In this document: positions 31,856 through 62,830 of the stretch, piece after piece | Position numbering within the stretch: the stretch's first letter is position 1 | Layout of the letters: every line of letters begins with the position of its first letter | Source: Podarcis gaigeae | Taxonomy: Eukaryota | DNA length: 64,000 nt | NCBI GenBank assembly: GCA_964106915.2 | Contig: OZ066927.1 | Reading direction: 5' to 3' (one strand) | Position numbers and translations under genes: made by a program | The notes under the pieces: generated by a model | Databases searched by the model: none | The model's input: the letters and a program-made list of their open reading frames with translations, nothing else | What the model was told of the DNA's origin: nothing

Positions 31856-31992
31856 AACAAAATAAAAAAAAATCCTTCCAGTAGCACCTTAGAGACCAAC
31901 TAAGTTTTTTATTGGCATGAGCTTTCATGTGCATGCACACTTCTTCAGATATCTGAAGAATATTTGGTCTCTAAGATGCTACTGGAAGAATT
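31856..31992. mobile_element. Degenerate Penelope-like inverted terminal repeat fragment
   Basis: Homologous to the 40687-40883 palindrome; central palindrome TTCTTCAGATATCTGAAGAA; right arm internally deleted. Confidence 0.7.
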
Positions 31993-40686: not shown

Positions 40687-40917
40687 AAAACAAAAAAAAT
40701 TCCTTCCAGTAGCACCTTAAAGACCAACTAAGTTAGTTCTTGGTATGAGCTTTCGTGTGCATGCACACTTCTTCAGATACACTGAAGAAGTATCTGAAGA
40801 AGTGTGCATGCACACGAAAGCTCATACCAAGAACTAACTTAGTTGGTCTTTAAGGTGCTACTGGAAGGAATTTTTTTTGTTTTGACTATGGCAGACCAAC
40901 ACAGCTACCTATCTGTA
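40687..40917. mobile_element. Penelope-like element remnant forming a perfect palindrome (94-bp arms, 9-bp spacer)
   Basis: 40687-40780 is the exact reverse complement of 40790-40883; flanking duplication TTTACAACAGGGAA at 40675-40688 and 40918-40931. Confidence 0.8.
40790..40827 (+). ncRNA. Minimal type-I hammerhead ribozyme motif (mirror copy on the minus strand at 40743-40780)
   Basis: GUAU-CUGAAGA-A-GUGUG CAUG CACAC-GAAA-GC-UC-AUAC: helix I GUAU/AUAC, core CUGAnGA and GAAA, helix II hairpin, palindromic AGCU helix III, UH site. Confidence 0.72.
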
Positions 40918-41074: not shown

Positions 41075-41115
41075 CAGTTTGATTGCTACGTATTCATTTG
41101 TATAAAGATTTTTGC
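41075..41115 (-). CDS. CSNK1G1: CSNK1G1 coding exon (GKNLYTNEYVAIKL, catalytic Lys)
   Basis: 41 nt, cattgcag / gtgagt. Confidence 0.95.
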
Positions 41116-42554: not shown

Positions 42555-43754
42555 TTTTTTTTAATAAAATATTTATTAAAATTTTTAAATACAAATGCAA
42601 AAATAATAAACAATATAACATATATCATAACATAGTTTCATAACTTCTTTGGACTCCCTCACGTCTCCCGCTCCCACTTACATCAGTATAGATTTTTACC
42701 AGCAATTTATCATCTTGTTTGCGTTCTTATGTCCCGCTCTTTTAAGTATAATATAATAAATCTCCAAAAGTTTTATATTTTCCTCAATCTCACTTATCAT
42801 CCTAATTCCATCTAATTTAGTGGTGCTCAATTATTTATGATCTAGCATCCTTCTTAACATTCAACCAAATTACAATATTTTTGTAAATAAATCTTAAATT
42901 TCTTCCAGTCTTCTTCAACCTTCTCCTCTCCCAGGTCTCGGATTCTGCCGGTCATCTCAGCCAGTTCCATGTAGTCTATCAGTTGCATCTGCCATTCTTC
43001 CAGTGTGGGTAGATCTTGAGTCTTCCAATGCTTAGCGATGAGTATCCTTGCTGCCGTTGTTGCATATAGGAAAAAAGTTCTGTCCTTCTTTATCACCCTC
43101 TGGCCGACAATACCCAGGAGGAAGGCCTCTGGTTTCTTATGGAAGGTATACTTAAATACCTTTTTCAACTCATTATATATCATTTCCCAGAAAGCCTTCA
43201 CTCTAGGGCACGTCCACCAGAGGTGAAAGAAAGTTCCTTCATTTCCTTTACATTTCCAGCATTTGTTATCAGACAAATGGTATATTTTGGCAAGTTTAAC
43301 TGGGGTCATGTACCATCTATATATCATTTTCATTACATTTTCCTTCAAAGCATTACATGCAGTTCAACCCAGTGGTCCACAACCTTTCCCAGTCCTCAAA
43401 CATAATATTATGCCCAATATCCTGTGCCCACTTTATCATAGCCGATTTAACCATTTCATCTTGTGTATTCCATTTTAACAGCAAGTTATACATTCTTGAA
43501 AGTACCTTAGTCTTAGGTTCTAACAGTTCTGTTTCCAATTTCGATTTCTCCACCTGGAATCCTAACTTTTTGTCATTTTTAAAAACTTCTTTAATCTGAG
43601 CGTAATGTAACCAGTCTCGCACTTTATCCTTCATTTTCTCCAAACTCTGCAATTTCCAGTTGTCTCCATCTTTTTCTAGTATTTCCCAATATTTTGGCCA
43701 TTTGGCCTCCATATTGGGTCTTTTTCAGGCCTTAGCTTCCAGAGGTGAAAGCCA
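42555..43754 (-). mobile_element. 5'-truncated L1-clade LINE (ORF2 C-terminus, 3'UTR, polyA)
   Basis: CWKCKGNEGTFFHLWWTCPRVKAFW zinc knuckle; frameshifted ORFs 43353-43712 and 42854-43348; poly(T) at 42555; 16-bp TSD AGCA(T/C)TGAGAATTTCA at 42539-42554 and 43755-43770. Confidence 0.92.
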
Positions 43755-44899: not shown

Positions 44900-45077
44900 C
44901 TAGCCTGAGCTCTCCGAAATTTCCACTGCCTATCTTCTTGCCAACTCTGAAATTGGGCCCAACCATAAGAACACCAGAGGCTGAAGTGGAACTTGATGCT
45001 CGGGAACTGTGTGAACTTCTTGCTGGATTTCCTTTTCCGGTTCGCCTTTCATCTTTCTCCCTAGTAAGATGGTCCAT
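44900..45077 (-). CDS. CSNK1G1: CSNK1G1 first coding exon, coding part (exon 2 spans 44900-45291 including 5'UTR)
   Basis: [12 protein letters not shown]...[25 protein letters not shown]; donor gtaaga at 44899; acceptor ctgttgtag at 45292. Confidence 0.96.
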
Positions 45078-45916
45078 GATCTTAAAATAAAAATATCTCC
45101 CAGTGAGCAGGATTTGGACTTTGCACTTATTCTTGAAGAGAGAAATATATATCCAGAAGAATCATTGGGTCAAACTATAAAATCATTTGGAGATCTTTTG
45201 GCACCATATCCAGGTTATTCGTGTTCTTCCACCGAACATTCGATGGGCAACTCCAGAGTCCTCCACAAGGTAGGGGAGAATCTTATATAACCTACAACAG
45301 AAAAAAGGGCAATTGTAAGATCAAAATCCTATTTATAAAAGAACAAGCTGTTCACTAAAATAGAATTCAATGATAGCTATTTTGGAATCAGCATTTTCAT
45401 CAGGTTGCCAGTGTCAGTGTAACCATTTGTTGTTTCTCACTGTGGAAAATATAAACTTGAATAGAGATGGACACTACCCATAGCCATTCCCAGCTATGGA
45501 AACGGCAGTTTTCCTCCATTCCAAAAGTCTCACACTTTTCAATCTAAGATATTAGAAGAATATCTTAGCTTTATATCAGGTAACAAAGAAGTGGATCTGG
45601 CTACACTTATGAACAATGTTCATGAGTCTAGATGTACAGAACAAAGGGACAAATAACGCTTGACAGAAATAACGCCCAAGAACACAAATGCATTTGTACA
45701 TCATACAAATCACACAATTTGTCAGCTAATGCTTTGGGTAAAGTAAGGGTAGCCAGAGTTTAATTTTTAGGTTTATTATATGCAAGGCTTTTGCATTTCT
45801 GCATTATAAATACAATTTCAACATTATATTTTACAAAATTAAGATTACGAATTTTAACCATTATATGTGCTATGTAGAATTCTACAAGGCAATCTCAGTC
45901 AAACCCCAGAGTTCTC

Positions 45917-57399: not shown

Positions 57400-58110
57400 T
57401 TGGGCAACCTCAGCGTATGCGCTTCACGCCAGGCGCGCCAAGTGTTATCAGGTAGGCGAGGCCTGGGCAAGTCAGAACATGCCTGAGCCGAGGGAGCGCC
57501 CCCCTCCCCAAATCCCCCCTTCCTCTCGCCCTGCCTCGCAACGGCAGGCCCCGTCGACCGCCGTTAATGGCACAGAGAGACGCCCCCCGCGCCGCCCTCC
57601 TCGGAGGTAAAGCAGCAGCCTGAGGCGCCTCTGCGCTGAGGGAAAAGTCAACGCCGCAAACGAGCGCTATAGACCGCCGGTACCCGCCCTGACCTCCTAC
57701 CGTCCTGAGGAAAGGCCGCTTCTCCCGGGGTAGGGGGTGGGGGTAGGGGGGGCGCGGGAGGGGGCGCGTACCCCGAGCCACTGCCCCCTCCTTCGTCGAA
57801 GCACTCTCAGGAGGGGGGGGGAGAGCGGGACACCCCGGAAGCTCTTGCTGCGGGCTCACGCCCTACGCCCAGCCAGCGCCCTATCGGAGGGAAGCCAGCC
57901 GGCCCGAGGCGCCGTCACAAAAACTGCTTCCGGGTCGCGGGCTCCGCGGACGCGCCTTAGCAACCGCGTTCGGTTACCAAGCGGAAGCTGGAGGGGATTT
58001 TATGGTGAGAGGGGGGTCACGTGACTCAGAGGGGGAGGAGTTGCCGCCGCCCTGCCCCCCGCGGAGCAGCCGCTGATTGTGAGGATGTGGAGACACGTGG
58101 ATTAAAAGGA
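57400..58110 (-). promoter_or_regulatory. CSNK1G1: CSNK1G1 CpG-island promoter and non-coding exon 1 (candidate donor ACG|GTAGGA, exon end 57701; TSS roughly 57900-57950)
   Basis: The only unique-sequence CpG island upstream of exon 2; ETS CCGGAAG at ~57927-57933; palindromic GTCACGTGAC at 58016-58025. Confidence 0.7.
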
Positions 58111-58975: not shown

Positions 58976-59281
58976 GCTCCCCCGCCTGCGTGCTTCATCA
59001 CCTTTGTCATTCCTTCCCAATCTTCCCCTTCCTCATTGAAGGCAATGCCAGCTGCCCTCTTGAACAGACTTGAAGAGTTGGAAGGGACCCGCTGCCATGC
59101 AGGAAACTCAGCTAAAGCACCCATGACAGAGGGCCGCCCAGCTCCGCTTAAAAACTTTAAGCAGAGTTCATTCACAACCTCCCAAGGGGGACTGTCCCAC
59201 TTAGCTGTGGATTTATCTCTGACTCTTCTTTCTGCTTGAAGATCAGAAGAATCTTTATTTGCATCAGTCACTAGCCGTAGC

Positions 59282-59419
59282 CAATGCTTTTTTCTGGGGG
59301 GGATGCATACCCCTAAACATTCTGTGAACCAAATTTGGCCTCATTGAGTGGCAGTATTTCAATATGTGTAGAAGAATGAGAGTACCCCTAAACATTTTTT
59401 TAGGGAGGGAAAAGCACTG
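59282..59419. mobile_element. Small hAT MITE (138 bp)
   Basis: TIRs CAATGCTTTT / AAAAGCACTG; TSD GCCGTAGC / GCCGCAGC. Confidence 0.75.
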
Positions 59420-60118
59420 GCCGCAGCAATAAGATAAAACATACTGAAGATAGAAATAAAAACCTTAACTATACAAAATACATTTTGGAGGCTTACATCA
59501 ATAATCAAATCATTTTATTACTTATTACACTTATTTACCACCTTTTTTTCCAGAGAGCTCAAAGTAGTATATTTTCCTCCCCAGCTCATCCTCACGAGCC
59601 TGTGAGGTAGGTTGGGGTGGTGACTGGCAGAAGGTCACCCTGTGAGTTTCATGGCTGAGTGGGGATTCAAACCTTGGTCTCCCAGGTCATGGTCCAACAC
59701 ACTAACAATTTCAATACACTGGCTCTCAAAAATACATTCTCTGTCCCTTTGGCAAAGGCCCCGCGGTCACTGCTCATTTCTCACCTAGTGTGAGCTGTTC
59801 TTTTCTATCTTCTATCCCCCATGCCTATCCAGCTTTCTGCTGCCATAATCAGGGGCGCCGACTTATAAAAAATATTGGGGGGCCCATACTGGGGTCCTGC
59901 CCTGGGAAGTTTTCTAAGATCCGCTCCCGGCCCGTTGCTGCTGCTGCCACCCGCCTCGTGGCCCCCTCGCCAGCTGAGGGAGGGAGAGAGACCGAGAAGG
60001 AGAGAGATGCGTGGTGGGCAAGGCAAGTGCCCGCCGCGCCTCGCCTCCCACCGCCCCTCGTGCCGGCCGCCCCCTCCCCTCCCTTCCCCGCCCGCACTCG
60101 CTCGCTCGCCCTCCTCAC

Positions 60119-60227
60119 CCCAGCTCTTGGCCGTTCGCCCCAGGAACTCGCCGCTGTTGGGGTTGTAGATGAACCTCCGCCACTCGGCCATAGACTGGCT
60201 GAAGGGCTTCTCCTCCTCCTTGGCCAT
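60119..60227 (-). pseudogene. ATP1B3: Captured orphan copy of Na,K-ATPase beta-3 coding exon 1; intron-1 sequence extends to ~59920 and 5'UTR to ~60455
   Basis: [37 protein letters not shown]|GTGAG: 109 nt, phase 1, matching the ATP1B3 N-terminus ([22 protein letters not shown]). I found no further ATP1B exons downstream. Confidence 0.9.

Positions 60228-60230
<3 letters not shown>

Positions 60231-60265
<35 letters not shown>
60231..60265. repeat. (GA)n/(TC)n microsatellite immediately 5' of the captured ATG
   Basis: Direct reading. Confidence 0.95.
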
Positions 60266-60270
<5 letters not shown>

Positions 60271-60582
60271 CTGGAAAGAGAGAGGGAGCTCGGCGGTTCG
60301 CGGGCGGCGGTTTTTCCCCTGCCGAAACAACAGCGGCTCCTCAGAACCGCTAAGTAACTCTCCCTCAGGCGCCCGGCGGGAGAGCAGAAGAGAGGAAAAG
60401 GAAAGAGGGGCTGGGCCAGTCGCACGCACCGAGCAAAACTACTCGCGCCGCCTCTTTTACTACCGTAATAATTATTTGTTTTAACTCATTACTGAATGTA
60501 TTTTAAAAGGTAACTATCATCAAACAAGGAAAATAAAAAATACCAACATAATTTTGTGATTTTACAAAGCATAATATAACTA

Positions 60583-61900
60583 CCGTATTTTTCGCTCTAT
60601 AACACGCACCTGACCATAACACGCACATCGTTTTTAGAGGAGGAAAACAAGGGGAAAAAACATTCTGAATGAAACAGTGGATGTATCATTTTTGTGCTTC
60701 ATGCTGTGGCCACAGACATGTGATCTGATGGTGAATTTGGGGTGACCCAATGCAAAAATCCTGAGGATCCATGTGGATCCATGTTTTGTAACCACGTTTT
60801 TGCACCATTGCAGCCCCAGGCAACAGTGGGTGCGTGATTTTGGGGGGGCAGGCTGTAGCCATGGACATGCTATGTGCTCTGATGGTGAATTTGGGCTGAC
60901 CCAATGCAAAGATCCTGAGGATCCATGTGGATCCATGTTTTGTAACCACGTTTTTGCACCATTGCAGCCCCAGGCAACAGTGGGTGCGTGATTTTTGGGG
61001 GGCAGGCTGTAGCCATGGACATGCTATGTGCTCTGATGGTGAATTTGGGCTGACCCAATGCAAAGATCCTGAGGATCCATGTGGATCCATGTTTTGTAAC
61101 CACGTTTTTGCACCACTGCAGCCCCAGGCAACAGTGGGTGCGTGATTTTGGGGGGGCAGGCTGTAGCCATGGACATGCTATGTGCTCTGATGGTGAATTT
61201 GGGCTGACCCAATGCAAAGATCCTGAGGATCCATGTGGATCCATGTTTTGTAACCACGTTTTTGCACCATTGCAGCCCCAGGGAACAGTGGGTGCGTGAT
61301 TTTGGGGGGGCAGGCTGTAGCCATGGACATGCTATGTGCTCTGATGGGGAATTTGGGCTGACCCAATGCAAAGATTCTGAGGATCCATGTGGATCCATGC
61401 TTTTTAACCACATTTTTGCACCATTGCAGCCCCAGGCAACAGTGGGTGCGTGATTTTTGGGGGGCAGGCTGTAGCCATGGACATGCTATGTGATCTGATG
61501 GGGAATTTGGGCTGACCCAATGCAAAGATCCTGAGGATCCATGTGGATCCATGCTTTTTAACCACATTTTAAGTGGGGAGGGAAGGAAAAACACAGAAGG
61601 GACACGGAGCAGGAGAGGGGTGTGCAGAGAAGCAGCTGGCTAAGAATGCAGGAGAGGGGTATAACAGGAGGAGGGAGGAAAGGAAGGCAAAAGTTTTCCC
61701 TCACCTACCCACCCAAGTCAGCCAGCTCGTGCGCTCTCTCTCGCTCTCCCTCCTGCACGGAGCACAGAGACACACTCTGCTTTCCCTCTGCCTGGAGGGG
61801 AGGGGCTTTCCCTGCTCTTTGTTCCGTTTGAGCAAACACAGCAAGGAAACAGAGCAGGGTGGGCAGTAAGACCCTGAGGCAGAATGCCGGAAAAATACGG
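60583..61900. mobile_element. TcMar-Tc2-like element nested in the Pack-hAT
   Basis: TA|CCGTATTTTTCGCTCTATAA ... GAAAAATACGG|TA; left end similar to the 39777-40037 family. Confidence 0.8.
60718..61570. repeat. 154-bp tandem repeat array, about 5.5 near-identical copies
   Basis: Repeating ORFs start at 60773, 60927, 61081 and 61235 (154-bp period); each unit contains GGATCCATGTGGATCC. Confidence 0.95.
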
Positions 61901-62085
61901 TAATAATTTTCTTAAATTATTGGGGGGCGGAGCCCCCCCAAACGAATTTTTGAGGGGGCTCGGGCCCCCTCAGGCCCCATGGAGTCGGCGCCTATGGCCA
62001 TAATCAATCATGACACCCCTGCTTAGATCCCTACACTGGTTCTCCTCTCCCTCCTGCTTCAAGGTGCATCACAGCCAACCTAAGC

Positions 62086-62086
62086 C

Positions 62087-62132
<46 letters not shown>
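62086..62132. repeat. (CTAT)n microsatellite
   Basis: Direct reading. Confidence 0.95.
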
Positions 62133-62830
62133 TGTTGTAAATAAAAACTGACCTTTTCCCTTATCGGGTATCCAAGAGCCCATATAGAGTCCTTACATAG
62201 GTTCCCTATTGGTAGGAGAGAATAACAGAGGCCAACCAGAGAATATTGAGAAGCAAAGCAGCTAGTAAGCTTGATCTTTATTGATCTGTTGCAACAGGGT
62301 GCTCCCCTCACCTGCAGGAGAGAGGAGGGACCCAGAAAAAGGGAGCGCAAGGCCTTATAAAGACTTTTGAAATTGCCACCCTGTAGATCAAGACCACCTC
62401 CAGAAACATCATACATACATCACAGAAGGGGTGTAACCTAAGACCACCCCCAAGATACATCATAACTACATCACAGAAAAGGCAGTCTAAAACAGAAATT
62501 TGAATATTGTTTTTCTCCTGTTGTTGTTTATCTCCTGTCTGGCAGGTTACTTGATTGGATTGCCTGGGGAGCCTGGCCATTCTTTTGTAGTGATAAATAC
62601 TTAGTTCCTGGGACAGGTCACAGGCTCACACCCTATTCATATCTTAAATGTGTCCTTAAGACAGGATTTGTGAGGAAAGAGGCAATGGGGAGGTTTCCCA
62701 CTTTCACCTTGCAGAGAAAACATTTGGTCAGTTTGGTCAAAATGGTTCCAGGTCGGTCTTCCTGTGTTGATCTACGTACGTGCGGTTATGAACATTACCA
62801 TACATCTACACATACAAAATTCCTATCACA
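62133..62830 (-). mobile_element. Solo LTR (~700 bp) of an ERV or LTR retrotransposon
   Basis: TG...CA ends, each flanked by CTAT (4-bp TSD inside the microsatellite); minus-strand TATA-like TTTATAA at 62355-62361 followed by AATAAA at 62277-62282. Confidence 0.7.

What the first reader, a model, noticed from the sequence alone, without database searches (positions are those of the whole stretch)
59842..62004. Pack-hAT transposon that has captured ATP1B3 exon 1 with its 5'UTR, splice donor and intron DNA
Seen: a 2147-bp unit bounded by 14-bp TIRs and a perfect 8-bp TSD (GCCATAAT), with no transposase. Inside is ~540 bp of CpG-rich DNA with an uninterrupted 109-nt exon encoding [36 protein letters not shown], a GTGAG donor and ~200 bp of following intron-like sequence. 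Known: this peptide and the phase-1 junction are those of ATP1B3 exon 1; ATP1B3 is not a neighbour of PPIB-CSNK1G1 in mammals; 8-bp TSDs are diagnostic of hAT elements; gene capture by TIR elements (Pack-MULEs) is well described in plants but much less so in vertebrates. Inference: capture happened at the DNA level, since intron sequence is retained, and the loaded element then transposed here recently, since the TSD is perfect and the CpGs have not decayed. It may be a multicopy family that spreads a portable first-exon/splice-donor cassette.
Basis: partly seen in the sequence, partly recalled or inferred. Interest (0 to 1): 0.93.

Follow-up and report, generated by a model that had tools for sequence, protein, structure and literature searches.

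The report
Transposon spreading ATP1B3 first exon
In a wall lizard, a jumping DNA element picked up the start of a sodium-pump subunit gene (leader, first coding exon and splice signal) and has since multiplied to roughly a hundred or more copies, one of which landed 2 kb upstream of a kinase gene; gene capture by such elements is known in vertebrates, but reported cases have only a handful of copies.

Summary
A 2,147-bp non-autonomous hAT-type element (59850-61996; perfect 8-bp TSD, TIR 12/14) carries 537 bp about 98% identical to the native Podarcis ATP1B3 5'UTR, exon 1 and first 198 nt of intron 1. The native promoter boxes were left behind. A related species has the empty site with one TSD copy and a single-copy ATP1B3 exon 1. 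Within-run k-mer depth of the cargo suggests about 120-180 copies per haploid genome in a second individual of the source species, 10-40 in another species and 1 in a third: a young, lineage-specific burst (rough estimates). The empty hAT shell has about a thousand copies or more in all four runs. This is a Pack-TIR (Pack-hAT), a known class, but the published multicopy animal cases have about 3-5 copies; in effect it resembles bat HelibatN3. Transcription is untested. Splicing into the neighbouring CSNK1G1 exon 2 would give an upstream ORF, not a fusion. The scan noted a second ATP1B3 copy and similar PKD2, CENPW and GNAL captures elsewhere in this genome (unchecked here).

The parts
59842..59849 (+). 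left target-site duplication (8 bp)
   Evidence: identical to 61997-62004; present once at the empty site in organism E (tables 5 and 5c)
59850..59863 (+). left 14-bp terminal inverted repeat
   Evidence: 12/14 complementary to 61983-61996
59850..59920 (+). left hAT arm (71 bp), no inner TIR
   Evidence: absent from native ATP1B3 loci; high depth in all four runs, including E which lacks the cargo
59921..60118 (-). captured first 198 nt of ATP1B3 intron 1, starting with the GTGAG donor at 60118
   Evidence: aligns to intron 1 of L001-L004
60119..60227 (-). captured ATP1B3 coding exon 1 (109 nt, 36 codons + 1 nt, phase 1); two substitutions versus all four lacertid natives (Lys6 to Glu; one silent)
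60228..60457 (-). captured ATP1B3 5'UTR / CpG island with a (CT)n microsatellite at 60231-60269; ends about 8 nt downstream of the native CRE-like box
   Evidence: near-identical to Podarcis natives; contigs of X2, X4, X7 all break or diverge at 60457
60458..60582 (+). AT-rich internal hAT segment, ending in the TA target of the nested MITE
   Evidence: depth of about 1,100-2,600 times single copy in all four runs, summed contigs
60583..61900 (+). nested non-autonomous Tc1/mariner-type MITE (1,318 bp, TA duplication at 60581-82 and 61901-02)
   Evidence: inverted ends (I3); related ends at four other window sites; MITE-free joined form 60580 to 61901 in all four runs
60718..61570 (+). 154-bp x 5.5 tandem array inside the MITE
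   Evidence: TRF 97% matches
61903..61996 (+). right hAT arm with GC-rich subterminal hairpin; right TIR 61983-61996
   Evidence: (I4)
61997..62004 (+). right target-site duplication
57400..58100 (-). context: CpG island taken as the CSNK1G1 promoter/first exon, about 1.8-2 kb downstream of the element in the same orientation as the captured exon
   Evidence: CpG profile; promoter role inferred from position
44900..45291 (-). context: CSNK1G1 exon 2 (AUG at 45077), first strong acceptor the captured donor could use
41075..41115 (-). context: CSNK1G1 exon 3, phase-1 acceptor in frame with the captured exon

Best explanation
A young multicopy Pack-hAT subfamily. Step 1 (shown): an abundant non-autonomous hAT shell (left arm, AT-rich segment, usually a nested mariner MITE, right arm) already existed across these lizards. 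Step 2 (capture shown, route inferred, about 60%): 537 bp of the ATP1B3 CpG island was copied at DNA level into the inside of one shell, most likely by template switching during repair of a break or stalled fork within the element, since both breakpoints are internal, have no TIRs, and show only short imperfect homology. Step 3 (shown by depth and empty site): the loaded element kept both ends, so a hAT transposase acting in trans moved and amplified it, to tens of copies in species B and more than a hundred in species A; one copy inserted here and duplicated 8 bp. Step 4 (inferred): most copies are probably silent passengers because the upstream GC, CCAAT and CRE boxes were left behind, but each carries a good AUG context, an open exon and a live donor, so copies in sense orientation in or upstream of genes can act as exon traps or alternative first exons. 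Here, splicing to CSNK1G1 exon 2 would give a 61-codon upstream ORF ending about 140 nt before the kinase AUG (repressive), and splicing to exon 3 an in-frame product lacking the glycine-rich loop.
For: TSD/TIR anatomy. Cargo 9-10 substitutions in about 479 aligned sites from three Podarcis natives, 24 from Lacerta; boundaries sharp. Complete seven-exon native gene elsewhere, only exon 1 here. Empty site at single-copy depth in organism E, where exon-1 contigs are single copy and continue into unrelated, presumably native, sequence. Single-contig cargo depth over single-copy flank depth: X2 123-176, X4 10-38, X7 0.6-0.7; X1 summed overlapping contigs 240-1,075. Arms and internal segment are high-copy even in E. 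Several cargo variants among contigs (13-24 contigs at some sites in X1), and one base (59949) private to this copy. Reading frames.
Against: The tool warns that contig depth is not a copy number; X1 and X2 differ 2-6 fold (overlap double counting, GC bias or real variation). I saw no second copy with its own TSD directly; the only one is an unchecked scan note (s1-670731). The right junction is not spanned by a listed contig, and the left only by 24 nt. The native ATP1B3 locus of species A and the empty parental hAT were not seen, so microhomology is not established. No transposase was tied to these ends. No RNA evidence; no chimeric protein found.
Confidence: 0.88

Rival explanations
1. Same multicopy Pack-hAT, but born as a composite: hAT pieces first sat on either side of exon 1 at the native ATP1B3 locus of an ancestor (or alternative transposition with a nearby cryptic end occurred), and the outer ends carried the exon away; inner ends were later deleted. 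This rival concerns the capture step only.
For: Another agent reports this route for a PKD2-carrying hAT in this genome (s1-656164, unchecked). A 13/14 match to the left TIR lies in native intron 1 about 155 nt beyond the breakpoint in three of four lacertids (0.3% chance per kb, post hoc).
Against: No TIR at either cargo junction. No hAT arm at the breakpoints in four native loci or, by contig continuation, in organism E. The cryptic TIR points away from the exon and lies outside the captured piece. Left arm and internal segment are both high-copy in E, as expected of one pre-existing shell.
Confidence: 0.25
2. Single, transposition-independent gap filling: an empty hAT already stood here and copied in ATP1B3 DNA in place; the high cargo depth has another cause.
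For: This is the commonest route for animal Pack-TIRs (PMC8277862). Whether species B has an unloaded element here was not resolved.
Against: The orthologous site in E is empty of any hAT; cargo depth is more than 100-fold single copy and the amplified interval ends at the hAT junctions.
Confidence: 0.04
3. The cargo is multicopy because of a tandem array or segmental amplification of one loaded element, with only a few true transpositions.
For: Depth alone cannot tell dispersed from tandem copies; the 2-6 fold difference between two individuals would suit an unstable array.
Against: This copy has its own perfect TSD and unique flanks; a second copy is noted on another scaffold piece with a length 312 nt shorter, close to two 154-bp units (inference from s1-670731); copy number is graded across species.
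Confidence: 0.06
4. Misassembly placing a repeat contig at this site.
For: No listed contig spans the whole element.
Against: The insertion splits the site exactly as a TSD predicts relative to the empty allele in E; an independent individual has the left junction at single-copy depth.
Confidence: 0.02

Closest known systems
Animal Pack-TIRs, especially Pack-hAT-N8_XT carrying CAPSL 5'UTR in Xenopus tropicalis (Tan et al. 2021, PMC8277862)
   Same: Host DNA inside a non-autonomous hAT, parental gene unlinked to the element, GC-rich 5' cargo, absent at the orthologous site, moved by transposition after capture.
   Different: That survey of 100 genomes found four multicopy cases (1.4%) with about three to five copies and none in the one lizard surveyed. 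Here the estimate is 100 or more copies, and the cargo is a whole open first coding exon with its donor.
HelibatN3 of Myotis bats (NUBPL promoter, 5'UTR, exon 1, part of intron 1; PMC4224331, PMC4778049)
   Same: First exon plus donor amplified to high copy (about a thousand), able to trap downstream exons; 5' gene ends are over-represented among cargoes.
   Different: HelibatN3 is a rolling-circle Helitron without TSD or TIRs, carries the promoter, and its exon trapping is demonstrated. Here the vehicle is cut-and-paste hAT, upstream promoter boxes are missing, and activity is untested.
Plant Pack-MULE / Pack-TYPE elements including Pack-hAT (PMC8903248; PMC8277862 introduction)
   Same: Gene fragments with introns between TIR arms, GC-rich cargo, often multicopy, modification of 5' ends of genes.
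   Different: Plant genomes; mostly Mutator or CACTA; this is a vertebrate hAT with a nested mariner MITE.
Ssk-FB4 of Drosophila (PMC8277862)
   Same: Young multicopy TIR-borne gene copy with distinct TSDs.
   Different: Nearly whole gene, four copies, expressed as protein; here one exon and no evidence of expression.

Membership tests
hAT superfamily, non-autonomous element | 8-bp target-site duplication | tested here: met
   perfect 8-mer on both sides; single copy at the empty site
hAT superfamily, non-autonomous element | short terminal inverted repeats (about 5-27 bp), starting CA/TA | tested here: met
   14 bp, 12/14, both begin CA; range from own knowledge
hAT superfamily, non-autonomous element | ends shared with an autonomous hAT encoding a DDE transposase | not testable with these tools
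   no transposase in the element; an autonomous hAT is noted elsewhere in the genome (s1-670749) but its ends could not be compared
hAT superfamily, non-autonomous element | dispersed repetition of the ends | tested here: met
   arm depth hundreds to thousands of times single copy in four runs; dispersal itself inferred
Pack-TIR (Tan et al. 2021) | internal host sequence with an identifiable parental copy not flanked by the element | tested here: met
   about 98% to native ATP1B3 in three Podarcis, no hAT arms there; parental locus of species A itself not seen
Pack-TIR (Tan et al. 2021) | TIR-element sequence on both sides of the cargo | tested here: met
   left arm 59850-59920; internal segment and right arm 60458-61996
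Pack-TIR (Tan et al. 2021) | DNA-level duplication, not a retrocopy | tested here: met
   exon-intron junction and 198 nt of intron retained, no poly(A), no exon 2
multicopy Pack-TIR | several copies with distinct TSDs | tested here: inconclusive
   multicopy by depth; TSDs of other copies not seen
multicopy Pack-TIR | no unloaded element at the orthologous site | tested here: met
   empty site in organism E; organism B unresolved
Helitron-type capture (HelibatN3) | TC...CTRR ends, 3' hairpin, no TSD | tested here: not met
   unit has TIRs and an 8-bp TSD
exon-trap / alternative first exon | spliced chimeric transcripts from the captured donor | not tested

The most novel reading that the evidence does not exclude
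Wall lizards host a recently or still active hAT system that repeatedly captures CpG-island first exons (ATP1B3 here; PKD2, CENPW, GNAL by unchecked scan notes) and amplifies them to hundreds of copies in a species-specific way, and some copies, such as this one 2 kb upstream of CSNK1G1, are transcribed and spliced into neighbouring genes: a cut-and-paste counterpart of bat HelibatN3 and of rice Pack-MULE 5' remodelling in an amniote.
Probability: 0.35. Interest if true: 0.85.

Novelty: new variant of a known kind. Interest (0 to 1): 0.7.

Why it matters
The main published survey concluded that animal Pack-TIRs are nearly all single-copy by-products of repair in dead elements, with a few cases at three to five copies. 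A Pack-hAT with an intact first coding exon at about 10^2 copies, absent in one close relative and intermediate in another, shows plant-style capture and amplification running recently in an amniote. With many Podarcis genomes available, it makes testable how TIR elements capture DNA (parent, shell and empty sites are all recoverable), whether first exons are favoured at capture or at amplification, and whether silencing of hundreds of copies feeds back on the essential parent gene. Practically, these copies will confound read mapping, methylation and exon-capture data for ATP1B3 in these lizards.

Tried and rejected
Search for chimeric or read-through proteins starting with the captured exon: only native ATP1B3s and read-throughs of native exon 1 in other taxa; P0210 (turtle) is a full ATP1B3 with a kinase-domain stretch in front, probably a merged gene model. 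These searches are length-limited and the source species may be unannotated, so the blank is weak. Search for other copies of the hAT arms in the window and in about 170 kb of lacertid loci: none. Inner TIRs that would mark a composite: none. Rfam: nothing. Literature searches for squamate or Podarcis hAT gene capture: nothing relevant. Retrocopy and Helitron readings rejected (intron kept; TIR and TSD present). The reads tools did not refuse this stretch.

Full report
Observation. The unit 59850-61996 (2,147 bp) lies between two identical 8-mers at 59842 and 61997; that 8-mer occurs only once elsewhere in the window. Its ends are a 14-bp inverted repeat with two mismatches, and nothing else in the window matches it at two mismatches or fewer. 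On the minus strand, 60227-60119 is an open 109-nt exon followed by GTGAG. The peptide hits Pfam Na_K-ATPase (E 2.5e-8) and human beta-3 best among solved structures (E 3e-13). It differs from Podarcis, Pogona and Tiliqua ATP1B3 at one of 37 residues, Lys6 to Glu. No transposase-sized ORF is present.

Source of the cargo. I fetched native ATP1B3 loci of Podarcis muralis, P. raffonei, P. lilfordi and Lacerta agilis. The window matches them in one block only, about 59921-60457: 230 nt of 5'UTR with a (CT)n tract, exon 1, and 198 nt of intron 1. Outside the microsatellite there are 9-10 substitutions in about 479 sites against the three Podarcis and 24 against Lacerta; the Podarcis differ among themselves at 4-7. 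So the host is very likely a Podarcis (inference) and the capture is recent. The native gene has seven exons over about 38 kb; the window has only exon 1. In the native loci GC boxes, an inverted CCAAT box and a CRE-like motif lie immediately upstream of the breakpoint and are not in the cargo (motif reading from own knowledge). Two or three of the cargo-specific changes are CpG transitions (60028, 59949, and one inside a 4-nt duplication near 60095), so decay has started, but 46 CpGs remain.

60583-61900 is a Tc1/mariner-type MITE with a TA duplication and a 154-bp x 5.5 array; related ends occur at four other places in the window. The hAT proper is small: 71 bp left arm, about 125 bp AT-rich segment, 94 bp right arm.

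Reads. Four public runs were laid on 59000-62600 as Logan contigs: X1 and X2 are two samples of the best-matching organism A (X1 may be the assembly sample), X4 organism B, X7 organism E. (a) Empty site: one X7 contig at single-copy depth (179; flanks 148-179) joins 59851 to the sequence that follows the second TSD, leaving one copy of the 8-mer (checked). (b) In X7 the exon-1 contigs are at depth 99-164 and run on for 277 and 442 nt into sequence unlike the window, as the native gene would. (c) X2 has a 215-nt contig with no mismatch from the flank 24 nt into the left end at single-copy depth; this is under the tool's 31-nt bridging rule but near the limit a 31-mer graph allows into a repeat. 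The right junction is next to an (ATCT)n tract that the tool skipped and is not shown. (d) Depth: relative to the median of unique flank contigs in the same run, cargo positions give 123-176 in X2 (59949 and 60315 rest on single contigs), 10-38 in X4, 0.6-0.7 in X7, and 240-1,075 in X1, where many overlapping contigs are summed and overcount. The tool states that depth is not a copy number; I use it as an order-of-magnitude ratio with an internal control (E gives one). (e) The arms and AT-rich segment are about 750-7,000 times single copy in all four runs, including E, so the shell predates the capture. (f) A MITE-free joined form (60580 to 61901) exists in all four runs, so the mariner is a secondary insertion into the shell; it is the minority form in A and E by depth, which suggests the shell amplified with the MITE inside (inference; the joint list is truncated).

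Mechanism. Shown: DNA-level capture, insertion at this site with an 8-bp duplication, lineage-specific amplification. Inferred: capture by template switching inside a shell copy. Both junctions are internal and lack TIRs, the native loci have no hAT arm at the breakpoints, and each junction shows a short imperfect run of similarity to the native continuation (four bases after one mismatch on the intron side), but without the unloaded parent this is not proof of microhomology. This fits the FoSTeST or gap-repair-then-transpose models of PMC8277862. The rival is a composite origin, reported by another agent for a PKD2-carrying hAT (s1-656164, unchecked). One unexplained hint: native intron 1 has a 13/14 match to the left TIR about 155 nt past the breakpoint in three of four lacertids (0.3% per kb by shuffle, post hoc), pointing away from the exon.

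Possible effect here. The gene below is CSNK1G1, on the minus strand, with a CpG island at about 57400-58100, exon 2 at 45291-44900 and exon 3 at 41115-41075. The captured exon has the same orientation, 2.2 kb upstream of the island. Read in phase 1, exon 2 stops after 24 codons, giving a 61-codon upstream ORF ending about 140 nt before the kinase AUG; exon 3 is in frame but such a product would lack the glycine-rich loop encoded by exon 2. Three AATAAA signals lie between the donor and the island. A functional fusion at this locus is therefore unlikely; a repressive leader or silence is more likely. The joined model was not built or searched. No RNA run of organism A was offered and protein searches found no chimera.

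Comparison. It meets the tested criteria for a Pack-TIR of the hAT type. That class is known: 370 cases in 100 animal genomes, 208 hAT, only four multicopy, exemplified by three copies of a CAPSL 5'UTR in Xenopus; the anole scored zero (PMC8277862). It works most like HelibatN3, which spread the NUBPL promoter, first exon and donor to about a thousand copies in bats and traps exons (PMC4224331, PMC4778049), but it is not a Helitron. I found no paper on hAT gene capture in squamates; the library lacks most subscription journals. The scan's own unchecked notes list a second ATP1B3 copy of 1,851 letters, 312 shorter than this one and so close to two array units, and similar captures of PKD2, CENPW and GNAL 5' ends; these are leads, not support.

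Verdict. Real, correctly interpreted, and a new variant of a known kind: the class is described, the scale (about 10^2 copies, graded across close species) and the intact first-exon cassette in a cut-and-paste vector are not, as far as my searches reach. Interest 0.70; it would rise to about 0.85 with evidence of chimeric transcripts or current mobility.

Noticed in passing
L001:5466, L002:5475, L003:3472: 13/14 match to the element's left TIR in native ATP1B3 intron 1, about 155 nt beyond the capture breakpoint, conserved in Lacerta and two Podarcis, partly deleted in P. lilfordi; orientation away from exon 1; no partner end found within 6 kb. Unexplained.
   Followed up: partly
window 60459-60472: The bases just outside the cargo's 5' breakpoint look like a mariner excision footprint (TA + 3 nt + TA) with the same flanks as the nested MITE site at 60581/61901; may be filler DNA copied from a sister element from which the MITE had excised.
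   Followed up: partly
window 60475 (X4 loose end): In organism B some copies of the shell have different GC-rich sequence left of 60475, suggesting another cargo or the parental interior at nearly the same position.
   Followed up: no
window 59268-59458: A separate roughly 180-190-bp high-copy insertion (joined forms skipping it in several runs), probably another small hAT-like MITE.
   Followed up: no
window 62146-62800: Very high-copy repeat right of the element, LTR-like by appearance; not characterised.
   Followed up: no
window 60718-61570: 154-bp tandem unit inside the mariner MITE contains short palindromes; unit number appears to vary between copies (inference from s1-670731 length).
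   Followed up: partly
window 40687-40884: Long inverted repeat in a CSNK1G1 intron with a related copy at 31858-31960; noted by the scan as a hammerhead palindrome, but Rfam gave no hit at gathering threshold.
   Followed up: partly
window 42854-43712: Two ORFs resembling the 3' part of a LINE reverse transcriptase on the minus strand in a CSNK1G1 intron (identification from own knowledge).
   Followed up: no
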